64,000 nt of DNA from the NCBI RefSeq assembly GCF_026571515.1, contig NW_026858824.1:248001-312000 (forward strand), read 5' to 3'. The notes under the pieces were generated by a model, which searched no databases, was not told the origin of the DNA, and saw only the letters and a list, made by a program, of their open reading frames with translations. This document shows positions 8,270 through 51,600 of this stretch, in pieces. A program made the translations under genes and the position numbers. How positions within the stretch are numbered: the stretch's first letter is position 1; every line of letters begins with the position of its first letter. This stretch comes from Ruditapes philippinarum. Its lineage: Eukaryota.

Positions 8270-9111
8270 AAGTGCCTCTGCTATATGCGGGGTGTAGCAA
8301 AACTTCAATTCCTGCTCCTCTCAATAAGCTTCGCTAGCTGCGCATGTGCATTATCATAAGTAATTTGATTCTGCGCACCCCGGACTAGACCTTAGGTTTT
8401 TTGTTATGCAGTTATAAACTACAGCAGTGAGAACATGGTCACGCTAAAATGTTCCAGTGACACTACCCCCATCAGGTACGGCGACACGGGCCTCTATTCC
8501 ATCACCGTCAAAAATAGAGCGTACATAACTCTTAAAGCTCAAGCTACGTCGGGCAACAACCAGACGATCGATGTTTTCACTTAACCACATTTTGCTAAAC
8601 GGGTTCAAACAAAACACAGAATTAAATAAATAAATGAATACATAAATAAAAATACATTTGTACAATTTCTCTCAGGCATCTAGGGTAAATAAAGCTGAGG
8701 CTTTTTCAACCAGCAGAAGTTAGCAAATGCGGGATCCAACGGGCGCACACTTTCTTTAACTTCAACTTTTCTTTCAAGATGGAAAACATACATGTATAAG
8801 ATGAAAGGCCCGATAAGTCACCTAGCTCCTGTGCGGTTTATCTTGCATCTTCAACAACTATGGCTTTGACAGTGATATTGCATTTTCAGAGGTAGCGGAA
8901 ATTAGCTGTCCAGGACGGGGATCATCCTTTACATTAGTTCCACCTTCCTAAAACATTGACGCTCACATGGATATTGTACGATATGGAGGGCATTTTCTCC
9001 ATAATCTAAATCTAGATTCACTTTTATTTTTGACGCGCATTTACCCAATGTTCCACGAATTTTGCAATAAGCTTTTTGCTCCTCTCTCAAATCACAATGC
9101 AACTCAGCCAT
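8270..9111 (-). mobile_element. Degenerate mariner transposase
   Basis: Across frames: N-terminal IRGTLG..DYGENAL, DDPRPG, LKLKKVCARWIPHLLT (WVPHEL-type motif, ~8720-8765), IFDGDGI..VPDG, EVLLHPAYS; multiple stops and frameshifts. Confidence 0.8.
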
Positions 9112-25100: not shown

Positions 25101-28100
25101 CTCTAGCAACAAACATACCCTGTAAAACAATATAACCAGATCAACATAAATGTGAATATCATAGTTATAATAAGTATGACAAGTGGAATTTAAAACGTAA
25201 ACATCACTAGCAGATTAATCACGTCAATGTTTACAGAAAGGTTTTAGGTTAAAGAGCAAAATTAAGAACTTGCATACATTCAATTTTAAATACTTTCAAA
25301 TCACACTCATGCATTATTATCATCTTCAAATGACTTCTAATTTGCATTAACCATACAATATTAAAATGAATGCATGTATATATATATGAATTCCGTATTT
25401 TTCATATAAAATATTGATTTGCTCTATCTTGCAGTCCAACAACCCATATGCAAGTAGAAAATTTAGATAAACAGTCCAACCTTCAATAAAAGATGATAAA
25501 ATGAGAATATACCAATCGTATAGCACCTCCTTTCCCTCTATTCTTCTCTAGTGTAAGAACTCTCACTTTTTCTGTACCATATGTTTTACTGTATTTAAGG
25601 GCAGTCTGTAAAATATATACAAATTTGTTGAATAATCACATATTTATTTCAACTATATAATTCTGAATACAATATATGTGTATCACATATATGTAACTTA
25701 TTTTTTAAAATTAAAATTTAAATCTTAACTACATTGTTATTATTATTAAATCTTACTAGAAGACAAAACATTTCAGTTTTTACAGGCCCAAGCAAACCAT
25801 CTTGTGTTGAAAAGTAGAATACTCCAACACGTTTCCTTAATAAGACTGCAGTACTGTAATCTTAACAGTGTAAAATTTGAAGTTTTATTTACAGTAATAT
25901 CTAAATTCAGGCAGGAATTCCAAGCAATTAAGTTTCAAAAGATACAATTTGTGTACATGTATATAGAAATGTAAGTAAAGGGGAAATAACTCACCTCTGT
26001 GGTTTTATCAGTACTGCCATCATTCACTACAACTATTTCATAACTAAATGATCGGTTCTTTTTCTGAAATAAAATAAGTTGAATATATAGTTATTACCTA
26101 AAAGAAACTGCAAATGTTATTTAAATTCAAAGTAGATAAAAAGTAACTTAATTGACAAAAGTTCACAACTTCAGTCATAACTAACTTTAATGATACACGC
26201 TGCATCTGATTAGAAAAGTGTACATGTATAAATAACAATCAAAATGCTGAATTTAAACATCTATCTTTCAGATGGAAATTTTATATTTTCATTTTAGGTA
26301 AAACACTCCAGCAATAATGTTACATGAATTTTCAAAACATCTTTTATTAGACTTTTTTCTGACGTAAGACACTTTGTACTTGTATGAATGTGATATACAC
26401 AGTTTATACAAAAATAAGTATAGGTGTATAATTATATATGTACCTGTCTAGCTTCCAAGAAATCTAATGCTTCATCCATCATTGTAGGCACTGAAACAGA
26501 AACCATTTCTATAAAATCATAGATTTACACTTGTCACTGGTAATAAATCAATTACTCTTAAATTACAGTGCATAAAAAAGGATATTCATATTACTAACGG
26601 AAGTTATGGAATTTTGCCTTTTTTTTTTCTTAAGCTTTTCATATACCTTGAGAAAATTTATTTATGTTCTTTATGCCACAATTCAAAACTGTTCATTATT
26701 TAGGGGAGAAAACATGTAAGGTGCCAAATAGCTTAGTCGGTACAGCAGCGCAACAGTATTCCGAGGTACCGGGTTAGAGATCCAGTCAAGCTGCATATTT
26801 TTCTCACCCTGTGACATTTATTAGTAAATAATGATGACAATGTAAATCCTTCATGACTTAAATCTTTCTTACATCTCTCTTCCTCAAAGTATGCTGGCAC
26901 AATAACTGATAGGTCCATACTTGGTGGGTCATGTATACTTGGAAACCGGAGTTTCTCATTTTTCGATGGATCTTCATAAAATTTCTCACTTTCATATCTT
27001 CCAAGATTGGGATATGGTTTTGATGTTATATAAATTCCAATTACAAGCTGAAACAAGGTAAAATGAAAACATTAAAATCAATAAAATTTTAAAAATATAA
27101 CAACATTAACATCTTTTATCATAAAAATGGTATTACACAGCGGTGCATATATTTTGATGTGACATCAACTACTATATATAAATAAAAAAATATAGTGTAA
27201 AGACGCACAAAATGTTAGCCATACACTATAGGCACATCAATGAAAAATGGTTCATTTTTAACATTCTAGATTTTGGGTATGTGATAAATAGAATATTATA
27301 TTCTTGTAGGTTCATTACTGAATTTTTTTAAGTTGTTAAATAATGAAATATCATGGCATAATATAATTTTATTAAACTCTTTCAATAAATTCAGTATCAA
27401 ACCTACACTCATTCAATATCTGCTATATATCATTTTATGTCACACAATACGAAAGCTTGCATGTTTTGGAAAAGTATAAAGTCTTATTCAGAAGTAAATA
27501 TCAGCTGCAGCTGTAAACTTTGCTTTTAAATTTACTTAATATTCAAAATGCAAACTGTACACATTAACTTTACAAATAATTTGCATATTTTAGTAAAACA
27601 ACTTCATTACAGGTAACGTTATCAAAGACAAGCAATGTCATTTGAATTCATCATTAACAAGGACTTCTCTGACATGTTGTTGTAACTTTCACTTTAATCT
27701 TTTTTCTTTCAAAGATACTACAGTTACATAAAGTATTCTTATTGTTTGTAGTCTTTCAGAAGATCTAGGTACACCATGATGTATACAAGTTTTGCTGTCA
27801 AAGACATTAAGAAAAACAAAACCAAAACAGTTGTTCATTAACTTTTTACAAAACCCTTGAATTGACAGTAAGTCATTATGCTCAACTGTAGTCGGTGCTT
27901 GATAGTTTAACATCACAAACACTTGGGGGTCAGATCCTGCCCCTCAACGTGATACGCTCTTGTAAACATTCTTATCAAAAATATTTTAATATTTAAACAC
28001 GAATGGGACATCTGTTACAATGATAATCTTTACTTTATTGATACTAGATGGCAACTGGTATTTTTTTCATATGTATAAAAATAGTTTGAAAACCAGTTTG

Positions 28101-29821
28101 TATGCCCATTCGTGTTTAAATATTAAAAATATTTGATAGAGTGTTTACACATGTGACCCACAGGTGTCTGTGTTGAACATGAGCCCAGTGTAGCGTCATA
28201 ATTACATGGAATATATTTACTATAAGCTGGTTTAGTTATTGCCCTTTCCTTTTTCATCTCTTTTGAAACTCATTTGTAAATGTTCACTCCCCAAAATTTT
28301 GTTATTTAACTACAACTAATACTTGAGTCGAAGGTTCAATGTCTTGAAGCCTTTACAGTTTTGTTGTATATTTTCAATTGATGATTTGACATCTTAAGTT
28401 CACCCCTAAAGTATTGAATGATATATATACCAACCCTGTTTAAAGAATGAAAATTTGAGAAGCTTAGCTGCATCAGCCTGCTTATCATCATAATCAACAT
28501 TTTAATTTTCTTCAATATAATAAAGTTAATTATTATAATAGACTTAATTACTTATAATAAATGTCACCCTTCAGAACAGCTCATTATTTAATGGAAAAGA
28601 TGTGTAAGCAGCCGAATAGCTCAGTCTGTAGAGCTGTGGTACCGTATTCCGAGAGTCCTGGGTTCGAGTCCAATCGTCAAGCTGCACATTTTTCTTACCC
28701 TGTGGCATCAGGCACGCAACTGGGGACCGTGGCTGGACATAGCGTTTAATTAGCATTGCTCAGTAACCCTGAGGAATTCAGGACAATTTTCAATATAGCA
28801 AGGGAGTATGTCACATTTCAGAAAGGTTCAATATTTAGGAGAGAGAATGCATAAGCGACGGGCAGCACGAAATACCCAAATACACCCAAATATACCCAAA
28901 TATTGCCCAAATATACCCAAATAATGCCTAAATATACCCAAATATTGTCCAATTATACTAAAAATAACTGTTTTATACTAAAAAAGTGCTGTTTTAATCA
29001 TGAATACAATATACACTTTCACTAAGATATAATCAAACATACCCAAATATACATTTTCCTATCATTGTGTTTTGAACCAAGATACAGTATATGTACTCCA
29101 TTAAAGCTTTTTTTTAAAAACATGGACTTCTTCCTCTATTATGATATGAAATTTCAACAAAATTACACCTTAAAAATGTAAGTGTAGACAACAAATATCA
29201 TATCTTGAATTAAAATTGCATTCATAAGGAAGCGATATTGTGATAAGCAAATGTCACAACTTTATTTTCTTACAACATCTTAACTGCCCATTTCAACGGA
29301 ATGAATGAAAGTTATAGCAGGCTATGTCATATCATTTTATAAATATTTATTTATTTCTCATTATAATCTATACTTTATACAAAGAAAAATAAATATTGCT
29401 ATATTTGGGTATATTTGGGCAATATTTGGGTATATTTGAGTGTATTTGGGTATATTTGGGTATATTTGGGTATTTCGTGCCGCCGTAAGCGACTGGATAG
29501 CTCAGGCGGTAGGGCCGTAGTACAGAATTCGGAGGATCCCGGGTTCGGGACTCTGTCAAACTGCACATATTTCTCACCCTGTAACATAAATAATAATTCA
29601 GAAATCTATGATTTGGAACTGATAAAACTGTAAACATTGAAAACGATAACAATTACCCCACCCACCATAACGTAAAGTTGCATCAGATCAGCTGCGGTGT
29701 ATACCTTTAACAAATGCATTCAAGAAATAAACATATACATATATCTGACACTTACAACAACTAAAAACACTAAAGCCAGAACTGCCAAAGCCCAGAAAAT
29801 AGATGCTAACGTGATTTCCAT
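22190..29821 (-). CDS. ALG5: Dolichyl-phosphate beta-glucosyltransferase, 324 aa
   Basis: Exons 29821-29756, 27047-26873, 26490-26444, 26063-25995, 25605-25513, 25119-24949, 24373-24222, 23822-23737, 22305-22190; 975 nt in phase. N-terminal TM, LSVIVPAY, NDGS, NRGKGGA, FADADGA, GSRAHLE, DTQCGFKL, WAFDVDLL, WQEIEGSK, WLQMGRDL. Confidence 0.97.
22391..23206 (+). mobile_element. Non-autonomous element with one-sided long hairpin (tentatively Crypton-like) in the last ALG5 intron
   Basis: Hairpin 22391-22563; inverted ATTCTAACAC (22564) / GTGTTAGAAT (23196); arm sequence repeated directly at 23130-23156. Confidence 0.6.
26674..26816 (+). mobile_element. Solo LTR of tRNA-containing TRIM
   Basis: TGCCAC..GTGACA, 143 bp, A/B boxes inside, 4-bp TSD TTTA on both sides. 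Confidence 0.85.
27905..28178. mobile_element. MITE-like inverted repeat
   Basis: 27961-28007 and 28105-28149 are near-perfect reverse complements; weaker outer arms. Confidence 0.65.
28562..29586 (+). mobile_element. Full-length tRNA-containing TRIM (Helenus/TRIMp3-like)
   Basis: LTR1 28562-28707, degenerate PBS 28708-28727, PPT AGCAAGGGAG 28797-28806, LTR2 28809-29586 (144 bp without insert), TSD TAAA on both sides. Confidence 0.85.
28860..29485. mobile_element. Foldback-like MITE inserted in TRIM LTR2
   Basis: TIRs (G/C)GGC(A/G)GCACGAAATACCC followed by tandem AATATACCCA 10-mers; 8-bp TSD TAAGCGAC at 28852-28859 and 29486-29493. Confidence 0.85.
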
Positions 29822-41467: not shown

Positions 41468-41606
41468 CAACATAGGGTGAAAAAAATATGCAGCCTGGCT
41501 TGAACATGGGCTGTCAGAATATGAATCTAACCAAGATCAAACAACTAGCTAGTCCCCAGCTTACACATTGTTTCCTCTATTAGTAAACCATTTTATACTG
41601 TGTCAC
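41468..41606 (-). mobile_element. Highly degenerate solo LTR of the tRNA-containing TRIM
   Basis: Reverse complement contains ATGTGTAAGC and GGCTGCATATTTTTTTCACCCT at family spacing. Confidence 0.5.
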
Positions 41607-45600: not shown

Positions 45601-48600
45601 TACAGCTGACAGCCAACAAACATGAGCATTCTATAGTGTAAAGCCAAAAGCATAGTCTCATTAAAAACTTATATAATCCTTGAAGATTCTTTTTTATAAA
45701 TGGTAGGCTTTTCTTGTAGTAATTATAATACATGATTCCAACAAAAAATCTTGGTGTTGAATGTAGTCCTATACATATTCTCCACACATAAGCTTGAGGT
45801 TTAACTCCAGTCACAGCACTCACTGATGGTATATTGTTTGTGACCTACAGAAATGAAACAGATTAACAAAATTATTTTTTTAAAAATATTCTTATTGAAG
45901 AAATGAACAGAATGCATGTTTTATAAGGATAAATACATTTTCCATTAATTTGATATTCTTTGGATAGATTTATGTAAGTATGTTAATCAGTCTGTCCTCT
46001 TGTATGTTTTTTTCTGCTTTTTCAAGCACTGTTTTAAATAGAGATTACACTACACATGTATTTACGTTCAGGCCTTTTCCCAGTGTCATCATACTTTTCA
46101 GAAATTATGATTTTAAAAGGAAAAGCCAATGGTAACACTGAAGTTTGTAAACAAATTTTAACAGGCAAATGAAGACTGTAATCAGCTTGTGTATAGGCTA
46201 CGTCCCAGTGTTAGACCTTCAAAAAATCAATAGTTCTTGTAAACGGCAATTGGAAGATCTTCCCATCTAATCAACTTTTGCAGTTTTGACTTCGCCGTAC
46301 ATTAGGTCTGTCATTTATACAAGGGTTATCATTTAATAAAATCATGAAAACATCCGTTATATGATGCGTAATATACCCTTACATTCGGACTGCTACTTAA
46401 AGCCATGTTTGTTGATTTGATGTTGATGCTCAGCAACCTAAAGGCTGAGTTTCACATGTAAATAGGAAATGTACCCATGATTTCGCTTATTTTGGTCGTC
46501 TGGACACCAAAATAAAAACATGAGTCAACATGAAACCCATTTTATTAAGGAAATGAAACTATTTCATTTATAAAATGCAGCTTTAAATATGTAGTGAACT
46601 CAGTGTCTATTTTAGTATTTGAAAAACAGGGGGGATTTTTATCGAAAAATGAGAATTTGTTACATTTGTTGATCTTTTCCCTTCTTTCTCTATGTAAAAT
46701 TTCCCCCTGCCTCTGAAAATATATGGGGGGGGGGCATTCTCAAAATATGACTGAATCTCTCCCATCCCGCCTCCTAGAATACACTCTGGTGAACTCTTTT
46801 ATGATCTCAAAGATTTGCAAGCAATTACAAGCAAATGCCTTCAAATGTTAACAAGATATATGTTGTTAACTTGTACTAACAGACCTTGTACATAAATCTT
46901 ACTTTATAGTGATTAGTCAATTTGGTAGAAAAATTAAAGGCAACAAGGAAGAAACATGTTTAAAGTAGTGTTACAGTTCAGAACTGATACTATAAAGGTT
47001 GGAAGATGTGTAAGCTGCAAATGCTTAAGTTGGTATAGTCGCAGAACAGTAATCAGAAGGTCCCGGGTTTGAGTCCCGGTCAGGCTGCATATTTTTCTCA
47101 CCCAGTGACATTTGGCGCCCAACAGGGAACCATGACTGCATATAGATTAGCATAATGTTTCATTCATATTGCTGGGCCCTCAATATACCAAATCTGTGGC
47201 TGAATACTGTCACAGGAATATTGTATGTTAGCTGCACCATTTTCTGTTTCATATGGTTTGATATTTGTATAGATGCAACAGGAAGACTAGTCTTCAAAAT
47301 GTTTCACAATAGTTGTTTTAAAAACAAACAAGAGCTGTCGGTAGGACAGCACGCTCGACTATTCTAAGTGCTTGATAGTAAAAGAGCCTTGATAATGTAT
47401 GATTTTTTAAGTTCACAAAAGGGCTAATTTTTTTTATAAATTCATGTTATAGGCCTTAGAGAGAGTCTAATTATATCCTTCCGAATAGTCAAGGCAATAC
47501 TGTATAAATACAGTATTGCCTTGACTATTCGGAAGGAAATGTCACAAGGGTATTTTATTGAGTATAATAATACTAATTACCTATGAATACATAAATTTGA
47601 CAGAAAAGGTACAAAGGCTTGTTATTAAGATGTTTTATCAAGTAAATCACTGCTTTGTTATCATGAATGCATAAAATTGTCCCAAAAAAACCCCTTAAGT
47701 AGTTATTGAGATAACAGCTTACAAGCAAAACTTTACCATGAATTTCTAAGTTGAAAAAAGGGGAGAAAAATCAGCCTAAATGCAAGATAGAATTATGGAT
47801 CTTTGTCAGTGACCTACAATTATGACCCTAAATGCATATGAGAAGTTTTAAATAAATATCTTTAATAGTTATTGAGATATGTAAAACTTGCATGTAAACA
47901 TTAACCAAGAGACTAAGTAGAAAGGGGATATGAATCAGCCTTAATGCAAGATGGAGTTATGGAACTTGGTCAGTGACATACAATTATGACCCTCCAATTA
48001 TGACCCTAAGTGCATGTGTAAAGTTTCAAGTAAATATCTTTGAAGACCTTTAACCTTTAACCAAAATTTCTAAGTTTCAAAGGGGCAAATAATTCTGCAA
48101 ATATTGCAGGCAGAGTTATGCAATTTTGCAAACTGATGTACATTGTTACTATAAAAAAGTATTTTAAATTTCAATTGAATATCTCGAGCAATAATTGAGA
48201 TATTTGACTTTACAAAAAAACTTTAACCAAAAAATTTCTAAGTTCCAAAGGGGCATAATTCTGTCAATATTGTAGGCAGAGTTATCCAACTTGTCAATCT
48301 GATGTACCTTGTTACTATAAATAAGTAATGTAAGTTTCAATTTAATATCTCAAGCAATAATTGAGATATTTGACTTTACAAAAAACTTTAACCAAAATTT
48401 CTATGTTAAAAAGGGGCATAATTCTGTCAATATTGTAGGCTGAGTTATCCAACTTGTCAATCGGATGTACCTTGTTACTATAAATAAGTATTGTAAGTTT
48501 CAATTGAATATCTCAAGCAATAATTGAGATATTTGACTTTACAAAAAACTTTAACCAAAATTTCTAAGTTAAAAAGGGGCATAATTCAGTCAATATTGTA

Positions 48601-51600
48601 GGCAGAGTTATCCAACTTGTCAATCTGATGTACCTTGTTACTTTAAATAAGTATTGTAAGTTTCAATTGAATATCTGAAGTAATAATTGAGATATTTGAC
48701 TTTACAAAAAACTTACACCAACGCAGACGCCGACGCGGACGCTGACGCAGACGACGGGGCGACTACAATAGCTCTCATATTCTTCGAATAGTCGAGCTAA
48801 AAAACACTGATATTTTTTAAGTGGTAGTTAATGGATATCTGACCAAAAGGAAAATAAAAAAAATCCCTATCCAGTGAAAATTCCTCTGCTGAGGGTAGTA
48901 ACCCACTTCCCAAAAATTTGATTGAGGGCCCTGCATTGCTCTGTAACCCTGAGAAATCCGAAAATGAATTTCAATATAGTTGGTTCAGAACTGTTCACTA
49001 TACAGTCTGTGTGAAAGTCTGTCGGTCCTCGGACCTCACCAACTAAAAATCAGGAGGGCCGAGATAAATTTCTATACAGTCAGTCCTCATGTCACAATAA
49101 AATTTCAGCCAGTTTGAAAATTTTTGGCCTTCTGAAATATGCAAAACTTCCAAGATCGATCTTTTTTTTTCCATTTTTGCTTGTATTCACAGACCCAGAT
49201 AACCAAAATCACCGCAAGATACAACCAGTTTTTGCTAAGTAATGTAAGCCACCATCTTGTCTTGGATAATTTCCTTACCAAAACATATTTTGTCTCCAAC
49301 CTTTGAAAGATGTATCGTTTTCTTGTGAATTAAACTAAAGTTTTATATATTATGTTTTTGTATATTTTTTTCATAGTATCTGATAGTTAAGTCTGATAAT
49401 TCATATTTTCTAAATATTTTTGTTTATAATTATGGCAACATCCCTCCCCCACCCCTACAAAAAAATACCTTTCAGAGTCCGGGCCGGGAAAAAATCATCA
49501 GGGCCGGAAATAAATCTAAGGATCCCAGTCCTTGTGGCCGGAAAAAAATTTTGACTTTCGCATTGACTGCACTATATTGGACAGAAGATGTGTAAGCGGC
49601 CAGATACCTCAGTCAGTAGAGCTGCAGAAGGGTGTTCCGAGGATATCAGGTTCGAGTCCTGGTCAGGCTGCATATTTTTTCTCCCCCTGTGACAGCAGTA
49701 ACTAACATTGATATATATAAATTGTACCACCAAATTAATATACTTTACTTTACTTTATCCAGCGTAGGGTCGCGAGATCAGAAATCTCTTATAACCCCCT
49801 CGAGGTCTGACACCCAATGATTATTATCCGGTATAACAGTATATAATTTGTTTTTCATAACCTTATCGAGTCTGTTTTTTAGCGAATTCAGCGTTGGTGA
49901 ACATACTACAGAATTTGGTAATTTATTCCATTCTGGTATTACTCTTAATGAGAAAAAATGTTTTCTTAATTCCTTTTTACATGATTTTATTTTCAACTTC
50001 ATGGAATTTCCTCTGATGTGATAGTTATCAAGTTGTGCTTTTTCAAAAAATACATTATAATCTATATCTTCCTTCCCATTTAATAATTTCCATGCTTGTA
50101 TGATATCACCTCTAAATCTTCTGTAAGCCAAAGTAGGAATTTCCAGAATTTTTAATCTTTCTACATACGATAAATTTCTGATACATTGAACCATTTTTGT
50201 TGCTCTTTTTTGAACTCTTTCGATTGCTTCAATATCTTTTTTAAATCTTGGACTCCAAATAATATTTCCATATTCAAGGTGCGGTCTTATAAGTGTTTTA
50301 TAAAGTTTCCGAAATTGCTTGATATTAACATGCAAGAAGGTATTTCTGACCAATCCAGTTATTTTATTTGCTTTATTGATACAATTACTTATGTGATGTC
50401 GAAATTTCAAATCTTTATCATATAATATACCTAAATCTCTTTCTTCCTCACTAGACCTCAATTGTTTAGTTGTAAAGTCACTTTTCATAAAATATTGATG
50501 TTCCGTGTTATTGTGGCAATCCGGTCAACTCGTCCCCTGGTCAACTCGTCCTCTGGTCAACTCGACACCTTTTTGGTCAACTCGTCCCCTACTTTTGGTC
50601 AACTCGTCCCTAATATGGTCAACTCGTCCCCTACTTTCGATCTCTGTCTTTAAATACTTTCAATACGAAGCCAAATATTTTGTTAAACTTTTTAAACAAA
50701 GAGTGATTGACTGCTTTTTGCAAAAACTTTCTAGCGATATTTCAAACAGTCCATTGTTAAGTAATATATATGTACATTTGCATAACTCATTTGAAATGGC
50801 AAACTACCTGAAAATTCTCCATAACAGAACTTATAGAAATTGCATAGCAAGATTAAGATTATCGTCACATAAACTTCGGATTGAAACAGGTAGATATGGT
50901 GCTAATAGAATACCCCGAGAGGAACGCATATGTCAGCTTTGCGATAGTAATGAAATAGAATATGAATTCTGTAGAATTATGTACTTGTAATTCATTTATG
51001 TTATCACTATAGCAAGTCTATACTTCCCATGATTCTCTGTAACATGTATTTCCGCCTAAATGTATGCAGCTACAGCGCACTTGGAATTAGTGAATTAAAC
51101 AGTCAAGACACACTAGCTACAAATTTAAATGAAATGTTACGTGACAGGATCGTATTTGGGACAAATTCGAACAAAATTAGAGAGAAATTAATAAATCAAG
51201 GAAAGGACTTAACCTTAGAAAAAGCTATTCAAATCTGTCAAAATTATGAATACTCCAGGGAGCAAATGAAAGAAATGAGCCGCGATGACGTACATGCTGT
51301 AACAAACAGACGTGAGTACAGACACCGTGCACCAGCCGCACGTGCAGAAGTTGGTAAAAGTAGACAGAAGCAGTCTAGAAATGGAAAACCCAAGAAGTCG
51401 GCAGTCAGTGGTAAAAAATGTGACAAATGTGGTTATGAACATAATGACAGAGAGTGCCCAGCAAAAGGGAAAAAATGTGACAAATGTGGAAAATTAAATC
51501 ATTTCAAGAGTGTATGCCGTTCAAAAACAGTGCATGACATTGAGGCAAATACGGATTATGACAGTTCCGAAAATTCTGATGTTGATTTCTATGTAAATAC

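What the first reader, a model, noticed from the sequence alone, without database searches (positions are those of the whole stretch)
28562..29586. Miniature LTR retrotransposon whose LTRs each contain a tRNA-derived Pol III promoter
Seen: TSD TAAA | LTR1 TGTCAC..GTGGCA (146 bp; A box TAGCTCAGTCTGTAGAGC at 28617, B box GGTTCGAGTCC at 28661) | PBS-like sequence | ~100-bp internal region | PPT | LTR2 TGTCAC..GTAACA (144 bp after removing a MITE) | TAAA. About 390 bp, non-coding. Related copies lie at 26674, 46969-49694 and ~41470, so the family is abundant and would be mis-annotated as a SINE or pseudo-tRNA. Established: Cassandra TRIMs carry 5S sequence in their LTRs, and Helenus (TRIMp3) was described with tRNA-like LTRs and 4-bp TSDs in animals. 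Inference: a Helenus-type family relying on a tRNA-Lys-primed autonomous element; whether this family is already catalogued is unknown.
Basis: partly seen in the sequence, partly recalled or inferred. Interest (0 to 1): 0.8.

Follow-up and report, generated by a model that had tools for sequence, protein, structure and literature searches.

The report
Old Helenus-type tRNA-bearing mini LTR retrotransposon
This is a real but long-dead copy of a tiny non-coding LTR retrotransposon whose end-repeats carry a tRNA-like sequence, a kind described in 2024 as "Helenus", so it is correctly read but ordinary, although its family is still jumping in this mollusc genome.

Summary
Window 28562-29586 is TSD TAAA | 146-bp LTR | 101-bp internal part with decayed tRNA-Lys PBS and PPT | 144-bp LTR split by a 626-bp MITE | TAAA.

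This copy is old. Its LTRs are only about 72% alike, and ARAGORN and Rfam no longer see a tRNA in it.

The genome (1.41 Gb; a marine bivalve according to an earlier, unchecked scan note) holds a young 394-bp subfamily:
- 15 of 16 two-LTR copies have perfect 4-bp TSDs, and LTR pairs are 94-100% identical.
- About 1,750 intact LTR ends and about 650-700 internal parts were counted.
- An empty-site allele appears in RNA reads.
- Each young LTR scores as a full tRNA (Rfam 44.5 bits), followed by a T5 run.

A Ty3/Gypsy family shares the same termini, Lys PBS, pre-PPT hairpin and 4-bp TSD. Hetero-LTR hybrids mark it as the likely helper.

All defining features of Helenus (Kojima 2024, PMC10886601, reported from pteriomorph bivalves) are met. 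The family's own words are absent from that paper's sequence set, so I class it as a new member of a known kind.

Pol III transcription remains inferred. The scan already found Helenus TRIMs on other DNA of this genome (s1-810579, s1-812926).

The parts
28558..28561 (.). 5' target-site duplication TAAA
   Evidence: identical to 29587-29590
28562..28707 (+). 5' LTR (146 bp, TGTCAC..GTGGCA), 85% identical to the young family LTR
28610..28684 (+). Decayed tRNA-like unit inside LTR1 (bounds approximate). A box is at 28617-28634 and B box at 28661-28671. A TATA-like TTATTTAAT lies upstream at 28584-28592.
   Evidence: for the motifs. By alignment to young LTR positions 49-121, which score as a full tRNA. 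Not detected as a tRNA in the window copy itself.
28689..28693 (+). T5 run just after the tRNA-like unit, a candidate Pol III terminator
   Evidence: A run of five or more T is kept in 5 of the 6 old window LTRs, in the young LTR copy L003 and in most listed copies of the sister families.
28708..28808 (+). Internal region (101 bp). It holds a decayed tRNA-Lys PBS (28710-28721), a remnant of the pre-PPT hairpin (about 28772-28793) and the PPT AGCAAGGGAGTA (28797-28808).
28809..28859 (+). 3' LTR, first 51 bp (TGTCAC..)
28860..29485 (.). Nested 626-bp MITE. It has terminal inverted repeats, subterminal 10-11-bp ATACCCAAAT repeats, and an 8-bp TSD TAAGCGAC at 28852-28859 and 29486-29493.
   Evidence: The family has at least 583 first-look candidates, with copies 88-98% like this one.
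29494..29586 (+). 3' LTR, last 93 bp (..GTAACA). A box is at 29498, a broken B box at 29542, and the T run is interrupted.
29587..29590 (.). 3' target-site duplication TAAA
26674..26816 (+). Solo LTR of the same family with TSD TTTA/TTTA (26670-26673 and 26817-26820)
46969..49694 (+). Second two-LTR copy with nested insertions. LTR is 46969-47110, an exact Lys PBS is at 47113-47123, and the internal 3' end is at about 48925-48979. The 3' LTR is in two pieces, about 48980-49002 and 49570-49694. Flanks are GTAG/GCAG.
41471..41575 (-). Very old LTR fragment of the family (about 72% identical to the young LTR)

Best explanation
Window 28562-29586 is one ancient integration of a Helenus-type TRIM, a non-coding miniature LTR retrotransposon of about 390 bp. 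It was later split by a MITE and is no longer functional.

**How the family works.**
- Shown: each 144-bp LTR carries a tRNA-derived unit with A box, B box and a T5 run. The 106-bp internal part holds only a tRNA-Lys primer-binding site, a short hairpin and a polypurine tract.
- Shown by shared signals and by hybrids: the element is a parasite of a Ty3/Gypsy family that uses the same tRNA-Lys primer, near-identical LTR termini (TGTCAC..GTGACA against TGTCGC..GCGACA) and the same hairpin-plus-PPT module. That helper's integrase makes 4-bp target duplications.
- Inferred, not shown: the genomic RNA is made by RNA polymerase III from the internal promoter of the 5' LTR. It would read through that LTR's T5 run and stop at the T5 run of the 3' LTR. 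The tRNA-like unit would then be the R region.
- Inferred from the hybrids: the RNA is packaged in the helper's particles.
For: **Structure in the window.**

**The family in the genome.**
- LTR-INT-LTR order holds in all clean copies.
- 15 of 16 distinct two-LTR copies have perfect 4-bp TSDs.
- LTR pairs share 136-144 of 144 positions, four pairs are identical, and copies are 97% alike on average.
- Word counts: 1,756 LTR 3' ends, 701 LTR/PBS junctions and 641 PPT/LTR junctions, against 0 in reversed controls.
- RNA reads and a contig from other animals skip exactly 398 bases (394 + 4) at copy L003. This is an empty-site allele and so a recent insertion.

**Common origin of the window copies.** All window LTRs are 72-85% like the young LTR (five of the six at 81-85%) but only 64-77% like LTR1, where compared. 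That is star-like decay from one long-lived master.

**tRNA-like unit.**
- Rfam RF00005 scores 44.5 bits, E 2e-8, over the full model.
- ARAGORN tRNAs in 26 loci, at positions corresponding to the TRIM LTRs mapped.
- The T5-T6 run is kept in sister families.

**Helper.**
- L073 has RT, RNase H and integrase in that order.
- Its PBS is TGGCGCCCAACGTGGGGCC and it has a hairpin plus PPT.
- Six solo LTRs and one internally deleted copy show perfect 4-bp TSDs.
- Hybrid L063 is Gypsy LTR + TRIM internal part + TRIM LTR inside a perfect TSD ATTG. L070 and L061/L062 are further hybrids.

**Literature.** PMC10886601.
Against: - The window copy no longer scores as a tRNA, and its LTRs differ by 28%. Its own TSD is therefore weak evidence when taken alone.
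- No discrete Pol III transcript was seen. The RNA libraries were poly(A)/cDNA or random-primed, coverage lay on both strands, and there were no pile-ups of starts or ends. In X24 the LTR:internal depth roughly follows genomic copy number.
- A T5 run sits about 5 nt after the tRNA-like unit in the 5' LTR. It should stop Pol III before the PBS unless it is read through.
- The lack of other T>=4 runs in the element is not significant: 47% of shuffles also have none.
- The tRNA-like unit does not fold better than shuffles (z = -0.42).
Confidence: 0.9

Rival explanations
1. Same element, different engine. The TRIM is transcribed by Pol II, either by read-through from host genes or from the TATA-like box at LTR positions 23-28. 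The tRNA-like unit would be a passive relic of an ancient SINE insertion into an LTR, kept for some other reason such as RNA structure or packaging.
For: - RNA-seq shows family reads on both strands without defined ends.
- The T5 run would stop Pol III inside the 5' LTR.
- A conserved TATTTA-like motif lies about 25 nt upstream of the tRNA-like start.
- Kojima states that Pol III use by Helenus is unvalidated.
Against: - The B box is nearly intact in the young LTR, in most old window LTRs, in sister families and in the published oyster, scallop and brachiopod Helenus LTRs seen. The T run is kept in this genome's LTRs and only weakly (T4) in several of the published ones. The first 48 LTR positions could not be matched by eye to those published LTRs.
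- I noted no AATAAA signal in the young LTR when reading it, so a Pol II transcript would lack a defined 3' end.
- Cassandra, the 5S analogue, is reported to be transcribed from its Pol III promoter.
Confidence: 0.3
2. Not one element. Two independent tRNA-derived SINEs or solo LTRs landed about 100 bp apart by chance, and the TAAA flanks are coincidence.
For: The two repeats are only 72% identical, and TAAA is a likely word in 67% A+T DNA.
Against: - The 101 bp between them matches the family's internal region over its whole length, with PBS and PPT in place.
- The same LTR-INT-LTR unit recurs hundreds of times with identical LTR pairs and perfect 4-bp TSDs.
- About 48 bp precede the tRNA-like part and there is no A-rich or simple-repeat tail. 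A SINE would not look like this.
Confidence: 0.02
3. The family is a vehicle that multiplies a working tRNA gene (Thr or Pro), so the LTR units are real tRNA genes.
For: - Rfam scores the unit above the gathering threshold, and ARAGORN calls a tRNA in nearly every young LTR.
- Kojima notes that seven bivalve Helenus families could encode tRNA-Thr.
Against: - Two of the five anticodon-stem pairs are mismatched in the Rfam alignment, and one acceptor pair is broken.
- ARAGORN flips between Pro(cgg), Thr(ggt) and Gln depending on single changes.
- The unit folds no better than shuffles.
Confidence: 0.03
4. A 250-bp satellite rather than a mobile element.
For: Tandem arrays (LTR-INT)n-LTR of up to five units exist.
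Against: - Most loci are single two-LTR units dispersed on different contigs, with unique flanks and TSDs.
- An empty-site allele exists.
- Arrays of this form are a known by-product of TRIMs and were noted for LTR-11_DR.
Confidence: 0.02

Closest known systems
Helenus (TRIMp3) of bivalves, Kojima 2024 (PMC10886601). Nearest by shared words are Helenus-3_CGi, Helenus-3_CVi and Helenus-4/4B_SaGl of oysters.
   Same: - Size class: LTR 139-140 bp, internal part 103-120 bp, full length 381-398 bp, against 144/106/394 here.
- 4-bp TSD.
- LTR ends TGTCAC..CCTGTGACA.
- Spacer plus Lys PBS TTTGGCGCCCAACG.
- The AATTCGAGGACGAATTTC hairpin followed by GGGGAGTA.
- A tRNA-like unit with A and B boxes and a downstream T run.
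   Different: - I could not match the first ~48 bp of the LTR to those families by eye.
- Most family-specific words of 9 to 20 letters taken from this family (for example from the LTR start, the region before the A box, the terminator region and the PBS extension) do not occur in the paper's 87-kb sequence file.
- A 23-mer from the 5' end of the Helenus-1_MyGa LTR is absent from this genome.
- Repbase and Dfam could not be searched.
Cassandra TRIMs of plants (Kalendar et al. 2008, as cited in PMC10886601)
   Same: A TRIM whose LTRs carry a small-RNA gene copy with a Pol III promoter and terminator.
   Different: Cassandra carries 5S rRNA, not tRNA. It is found in plants, and its helper is unknown.
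tRNA-derived SINEs (SINE2)
   Same: Short and non-coding, with an internal A/B-box promoter. Both are mis-called as tRNA genes by tRNA finders.
   Different: SINEs start at the tRNA-like head, end in an A-rich or simple-repeat tail, are copied by LINE machinery and have variable TSDs. Here there are paired LTRs, TG..CA ends, PBS, PPT and a fixed 4-bp TSD.
Gypsy-125_CGi, the tRNA-Lys-primed Gypsy that Kojima names as PBS-similar to bivalve Helenus
   Same: The helper candidate here (L073) is a Ty3/Gypsy element with a tRNA-Lys PBS.
   Different: No sequence comparison with Gypsy-125_CGi was possible. The link here rests on hybrids, shared termini, the hairpin/PPT module and TSD length, not on PBS similarity alone.

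Membership tests
Helenus (TRIM with tRNA-derived LTR sequence; Kojima 2024) | Short non-autonomous element with two LTRs and no coding capacity | tested here: met
   The window copy measures 146 + 101 + 144 bp and young copies measure 144 + 106 + 144 = 394 bp. Only mechanical ORFs of at most 77 aa with alternative start codons are present.
Helenus (TRIM with tRNA-derived LTR sequence; Kojima 2024) | tRNA-like sequence with conserved A and B boxes inside each LTR | tested here: met
   The young LTR scores 44.5 bits on Rfam tRNA (gathering score 29) over model positions 1-71. ARAGORN calls a tRNA in nearly every young LTR. The window copy keeps the A box at 28617 and the B box at 28661 but no longer scores as a tRNA.
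Helenus (TRIM with tRNA-derived LTR sequence; Kojima 2024) | PBS next to the 5' LTR and PPT next to the 3' LTR | tested here: met
   In young copies the PBS TGGCGCCCAACGG sits 2 nt after the LTR and the PPT GCAGGGGAGTA abuts the 3' LTR. The two junction words occur 701 and 641 times against 0 in controls. The window copy has a decayed PBS (8 of 12 positions) and the PPT AGCAAGGGAGTA.
Helenus (TRIM with tRNA-derived LTR sequence; Kojima 2024) | 4-bp TSD in animal members | tested here: met
   15 of 16 two-LTR copies are perfect. In the window the flanks are TAAA/TAAA and TTTA/TTTA. The empty-site joint skips 394 + 4 bases.
Helenus (TRIM with tRNA-derived LTR sequence; Kojima 2024) | Dependence on an autonomous Gypsy element that shares the PBS (animal members) | tested here: met
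   L073 is a Gypsy element (RT-RNase H-integrase) with a Lys PBS, like termini and 4-bp TSDs. Hetero-LTR hybrids are joined inside the PBS, one of them (L063) within a perfect TSD. Mobilisation itself was not shown experimentally.
Helenus (TRIM with tRNA-derived LTR sequence; Kojima 2024) | Functional Pol III promoter (the TRIMp3 concept) | not testable with these tools
   Only poly(A)/cDNA and random-primed RNA-seq runs could be laid, and they showed no defined starts or ends. The source paper also leaves this feature unvalidated.
Cassandra / Ajax (TRIMs with 5S rRNA in the LTR) | 5S rRNA-derived sequence in the LTR | tested here: not met
   An Rfam scan of the young element finds tRNA and no 5S rRNA.
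tRNA-derived SINE (SINE2) | tRNA-like head at the 5' end, a LINE-type tail, and no LTRs, PBS or PPT | tested here: not met
   The tRNA-like unit starts at LTR position 49. The element has paired LTRs, PBS, PPT, TG..CA ends and a fixed 4-bp TSD.

The most novel reading that the evidence does not exclude
The roughly 100-bp internal part may be a minimal, trans-phylum 'helper-capture' module made of a tRNA-Lys PBS, a short stem-loop with a C-G-closed AGGA/GGA loop, and a GGGGAG polypurine tract.

The same stem-loop-spacer-PPT layout appears in three places:
- in this TRIM;
- in its Gypsy helper, with an extra compensating G-C pair;
- by eye, in published Helenus internal regions of oysters, scallops, pen shells, wasps and a nemertean, with different stem letters.

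If this holds, the hairpin would be the packaging or plus-strand-priming signal through which Helenus elements hijack one Gypsy lineage. Together with the hetero-LTR hybrids, it would answer Kojima's open question of how a TRIM stays tied to its helper.
Probability: 0.3. Interest if true: 0.5.

Novelty: new member of a known kind. Interest (0 to 1): 0.3.

Why it matters
**Annotation.** This one family puts about 1,750 well-kept LTRs into the genome. In the sample I checked, ARAGORN called a tRNA gene (Pro, Thr or Gln) in almost every one, and Rfam scored the copy I tested above threshold. tRNA counts and SINE annotation for this genome will therefore be badly inflated unless the family is masked as an LTR element.

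**Biology.**
- The family is a live Helenus lineage, with identical LTR pairs and an insertion polymorphism.
- A helper can be named from hetero-LTR hybrids, so the genome is a good place to test whether TRIMp3 elements really use Pol III. The test would also show how they get past the terminator inside their own 5' LTR.

**The window copy.** It has no special importance. It is a decayed relic that shows the family has persisted with a nearly unchanged master sequence while old copies drifted 15-20%.

Tried and rejected
1. **tRNA detection in the window.** ARAGORN found no tRNA in the window, and Rfam found none at E<=1 in the part searched, 26000-50000. The tRNA likeness of the window copy rests on alignment to young copies.
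2. **Depletion of T>=4 runs outside the terminator.** I looked for this as a Pol III signature. It is not significant, because 47% of shuffles also have none.
3. **RNA evidence for a Pol III transcript.** Reads from three raw RNA-seq runs and one contig set show the family on both strands with no start or end pile-ups. This is uninformative, since the libraries were poly(A)/cDNA or random-primed.
4. **Cloverleaf by thermodynamic folding.** The MFE structure is not a cloverleaf, and z = -0.42.
5. **Exact-word look-ups in the supplement of Kojima 2024.** Of 24 words taken from the family, the family-specific ones are absent. Only generic or lineage-wide words match: the Lys PBS, TCGAGGACGA, TGTCACGG, CCTGTGACA, GGTTCAGAAC and parts of the tRNA-like unit.
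6. **A 23-mer from the 5' end of the Helenus-1_MyGa LTR.** It has 0 hits in this genome.
7. **His-primed Helenus in this genome.** 0 hits.
8. **Other families here with the same CG-RGGA-CG hairpin before a PPT.** 2 hits against 14 in the control, so none.
   - I did not align the published consensus sequences in a script, because sequence from a paper may not be typed into tools. That comparison is by word look-up and by eye only.
   - I built no family consensus. Natural copy L003:1501-1894 served as the reference throughout.
10. **Species identity.** Run labels are coded. 'Mollusc metagenome' RNA runs hold the element, and an earlier scan note says marine bivalve (unchecked).
Full report
**1. 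What is in the window**

| Part | Coordinates | Note |
|---|---|---|
| TSD | 28558-28561 | TAAA |
| LTR1 | 28562-28707 | 146 bp, TGTCAC..GTGGCA |
| Internal region | 28708-28808 | 101 bp |
| LTR2, first part | 28809-28859 | TGTCAC.. |
| Inserted element (MITE) | 28860-29485 | 626 bp |
| LTR2, second part | 29494-29586 | ..GTAACA |
| TSD | 29587-29590 | TAAA |

- With the insert and one copy of its target duplication removed, LTR2 is 144 bp and the whole element is 391 bp.
- The quoted A box (TAGCTCAGTCTGTAGAGC, 28617) and B box (GGTTCGAGTCC, 28661) are at the stated positions.
- The insert is a MITE. It has long terminal inverted repeats made of 10-11-bp ATACCCAAAT units and a perfect 8-bp target duplication TAAGCGAC.

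The copy is old.
- The two LTRs align over their whole length at only about 72% identity.
- The sequence after LTR1 (AGGCACGCAACT) matches the family's primer-binding site at 8 of 12 positions.
- The B box of LTR2 is broken.
- ARAGORN finds no tRNA in the window, and Rfam finds none at E<=1 in 26000-50000.
- Taken alone, a TAAA/TAAA flank in 67% A+T DNA is modest evidence. I estimate the chance at about 0.6% from the base counts.

- 26674-26816 is a solo LTR with TTTA on both sides.
- 46969-49694 is a two-LTR element swollen by nested insertions. It has an exact TGGCGCCCAAC two bases after its 5' LTR.
- 41471-41575 on the minus strand is an old fragment.

**2. The family in the genome settles the structure**

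A search of the window's own assembly (1.41 Gb, 15,874 contigs) with LTR1 plus the internal region found 1,456 first-look candidates. The scored ones matched at 79-84% over the full query. Mapping LTR and internal region onto 30 fetched loci shows the same order everywhere. Most are LTR(144)-INT(106)-LTR(144) = 394 bp. Some are tandem arrays (LTR-INT)n-LTR of up to five LTRs.

- **Target duplications.** Of 16 distinct, cleanly bounded two-LTR copies, 15 have a perfect 4-bp duplication. The duplicated words differ from copy to copy (TACA, TAAG, CATG, CTGA, TACG, GACC, TTTA, GATC, CCTG, ATAG, AATG, TGTA, AAAC and others).
- **Age.** LTR pairs within a copy share 136-144 of 144 positions, and four pairs are identical. 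Copies are 97% alike on average.
- **Copy number.** Exact-word counts with reversed-pattern controls give a minimum for the young subfamily:

| Word | Allowed mismatches | Hits | Control |
|---|---|---|---|
| LTR 3' end (33-mer) | <=2 | 1,756 | 0 |
| LTR/PBS junction | <=1 | 701 | 0 |
| PPT/LTR junction | <=1 | 641 | 0 |

- **Recent activity.** I laid public RNA reads on one young copy with its flanks, L003:1301-2094. Ninety-two reads in run X22, 83 in X23 and one assembled contig in X15 join position 1496 to 1895. They skip exactly 398 bases, which is the 394-bp element plus one copy of its TACA duplication. This is the empty site, so the insertion is polymorphic and recent.

Each window LTR is 72-85% identical to the young LTR (five of the six at 81-85%). 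Where compared, the window LTRs are only 64-77% identical to LTR1. That is the star-like pattern expected if all decayed independently from a master sequence that changed little. A minority of the differences, 4-7 per LTR out of 19-38, are CpG-to-TpG/CpA changes. The 28% difference between the two LTRs of the window element is therefore what one old integration predicts (about 15% plus 19%). It is not a sign of two unrelated insertions.

**3. The tRNA-like unit**

- In young copies, LTR positions 49-121 match the Rfam tRNA model end to end: 44.5 bits against a gathering score of 29, E = 2e-8.
- The D arm and T arm are perfect.
- The acceptor stem has one broken pair and the anticodon stem has two.
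- ARAGORN makes 67 tRNA calls in 26 loci, at positions corresponding to the TRIM LTRs mapped. It calls almost every young LTR a tRNA but flips between Pro(cgg), Thr(ggt) and once Gln.
- The sequence does not fold better than shuffles.

So it is a tRNA-derived promoter-bearing relic rather than a working tRNA. This matches the source paper's view of Helenus.

- A T5 run lies about 5 nt after the unit (LTR positions 126-130).
- A run of five or more T is kept in five of the six old window LTRs and in most copies of the sister families of the same genome whose LTR ends differ (..CGGTTACA).
- A TATTTA-like motif about 25 nt upstream of the unit is also kept in the old copies.

**4. Internal region and helper**

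The young internal region has three parts.
- It starts with TT + TGGCGCCCAACGG, a tRNA-Lys-type primer site.
- It has an 8-bp-stem hairpin, GAAATTCG-AGGA-CGAATTTC.
- It ends with the polypurine tract GCAGGGGAGTA.

Among 30 loci fetched by the LTR/PBS junction word, two adjacent loci (L053/L054) had the TRIM internal region and 3' LTR behind a different LTR.

That LTR belongs to a family with at least 178 first-look candidates. A full-length copy, L073 (8.99 kb), has these features.
- It carries reverse transcriptase, RNase H and integrase domains in Ty3/Gypsy order.
- Its LTRs run TGTCGC..GCGACA.
- Its PBS is AA + TGGCGCCCAACGTGGGGCC.
- Just before its 3' LTR it has a hairpin, GAAATGTCG-GGA-CGACATTT, then a spacer, then GAGGGGAGGA. 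This is the same module as in the TRIM, with one extra G-C pair in the stem.
- Six solo LTRs and one internally deleted copy of this Gypsy family have perfect 4-bp target duplications.

Hybrids occur at three or more independent loci.
- L063 is a 653-bp unit made of Gypsy LTR + TRIM internal region + TRIM LTR, inside a perfect duplication ATTG. It therefore integrated as one piece.
- At the joint it keeps the Gypsy spacer AA before the PBS and TRIM sequence after TGGCGCCCAAC. The switch happened within the shared primer site.
- My inference: this is what an intermolecular plus-strand transfer between two co-packaged templates would give.
- An earlier follow-up of this scan reported the same kind of hybrid on other DNA (s1-812926). 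I re-found it independently here.

**5. Comparison with what is known**

- The paper reports 51 families in five orders of pteriomorph bivalves.
- It reports 4-bp TSDs in animals.
- It lists tRNA-Lys among the primers used.
- It reports PBS similarity to Gypsy elements only.
- It states that Pol III use is not validated and that the way a TRIM stays tied to its helper is unknown.

All defining features are met here (see the membership table).

Word look-ups in the paper's sequence file point to Helenus-3_CGi, Helenus-3_CVi and Helenus-4/4B_SaGl as nearest. They share:
- the LTR ends TGTCAC..CCTGTGACA;
- TTTGGCGCCCAACG;
- the AATTCGAGGACGAATTTC hairpin followed by GGGGAGTA.

Most family-specific words taken from our LTR start, the pre-A-box region, the terminator region and the PBS extension are absent from the file. 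No listed family has the 144/106/394 dimensions. A 23-mer from the 5' end of the Helenus-1_MyGa LTR is absent from this genome.

I conclude that this is a new member of a known kind. Repbase and Dfam could not be consulted. The comparison with published consensus sequences is by word look-up and by eye, because paper sequence may not be typed into tools.

**6. Mechanism: shown and inferred**

*Shown*
- TRIM anatomy, 4-bp TSD, recent activity and abundance.
- A tRNA-derived unit with A box, B box and T run in each LTR.
- A Gypsy family with matching primer site, termini, hairpin/PPT and TSD length.
- Integrated hybrids between the two.

*Inferred*
- Pol III starts just upstream of the tRNA-like unit in the 5' LTR.
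- Pol III reads through that LTR's T5 run at some frequency and stops at the T5 run of the 3' LTR.
- On this reading, U3 is about positions 1-48, R is about 49-130 and U5 is about 131-144.
- The RNA is packaged, primed by tRNA-Lys and integrated by the Gypsy proteins.

The RNA data neither support nor refute the Pol III step. The libraries are poly(A)/cDNA or random-primed, coverage lies on both strands without defined ends, and in X24 the LTR:internal depth follows copy number. A depletion of T runs elsewhere in the element is not significant. The main rival on mechanism is Pol II or read-through transcription with the tRNA unit as a relic.

**7. Verdict**

The element in the window is a dead copy of a living Helenus family. 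The kind has been known since 2024, and this scan had already recognised it on other DNA of the same genome (s1-810579, s1-812926).

The practical consequence is for annotation: many hundreds, probably well over a thousand, spurious tRNA calls. The points worth following are the Pol III terminator paradox and the PBS-hairpin-PPT module shared with the helper.

Noticed in passing
window 28860-29485: A 626-bp MITE sits inside LTR2. It has a perfect 8-bp TSD (TAAGCGAC), terminal inverted repeats and subterminal 10-11-bp ATACCCAAAT repeats. The family has at least 583 first-look candidates in the genome, and copies are 88-98% like this one. The MITE is therefore far younger than the TRIM it interrupts. 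The 8-bp TSD suggests a hAT-type origin; I did not test this.
   Followed up: partly
L003:1714-1733; L073 about 8439-8458; window about 28772-28793 (decayed): A stem-loop with a C-G-closed AGGA/GGA loop lies 8-10 nt upstream of the polypurine tract. It occurs in the TRIM and in its Gypsy helper, where the stem has one extra G-C pair. The same layout, with different stem letters, is visible by eye in published Helenus internal regions from oysters, scallops, a pen shell, wasps and a nemertean. It may be a shared cis signal. No other family in this genome has the exact loop.
   Followed up: partly
L063:1265-1917 (-); L070:1342-2006; L061/L062: Hetero-LTR hybrids consist of a Gypsy 5' LTR, the TRIM internal region and the TRIM 3' LTR, joined inside the shared tRNA-Lys primer site. 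L063 is flanked by a perfect 4-bp TSD (ATTG). L061 and L062 are two copies about 37 kb apart on one contig with shared flanks, which points to a segmental duplication.
   Followed up: yes
G000, 39 places listed (for example C208:33356-33411): Sister Helenus families occur in the same genome. Their LTR ends are ..GGTTCAAATCCCGGTCAGGCTGCAAATTTTT(T)CTCACCCGGTTACA or ..CTGTTACA, followed by AT + TGGCGCCCA. The T5-T6 run is kept in most of them.
   Followed up: no
L003:1328-1462: An unrelated repeat in the left flank of the young TRIM copy has RNA-seq depth in the thousands in runs X22 and X23. It also shows many loose ends and strand-switch joints. It is a highly expressed repeat of unknown kind.
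   Followed up: no
window 46969-49694: The second TRIM copy has lost its PPT and the first 6 bp of its 3' LTR through a deletion of roughly 14 bp at about 48980. It carries two nested insertions. One is about 47330-48800, with internal tandem repeats of about 120-130 bp. The other is a 567-bp element at 49003-49569 with CAGTC..GACTG ends and a CACTATA duplication. Rfam gives a sub-threshold mir-92-like hairpin hit at 47473-47539 (33 bits against a gathering score of 47). That stretch is a perfect palindrome inside the first insertion.
   Followed up: partly
window about 29755-29821 (-): On the minus strand, an ATG at 29821 opens a hydrophobic, signal-peptide-like reading frame that runs into GTAAGT at about 29755. 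If this is a first exon, the TRIM lies antisense in intron 1, about 170 bp from the donor site.
   Followed up: no
L015 and L016 (C14945:106100 and C11151:24192): Two TRIM copies on different contigs have identical flanks and an identical TSD (GACC). This is either a duplicated segment or two haplotype contigs of one locus, so copy counts from this assembly may be slightly inflated.
   Followed up: no
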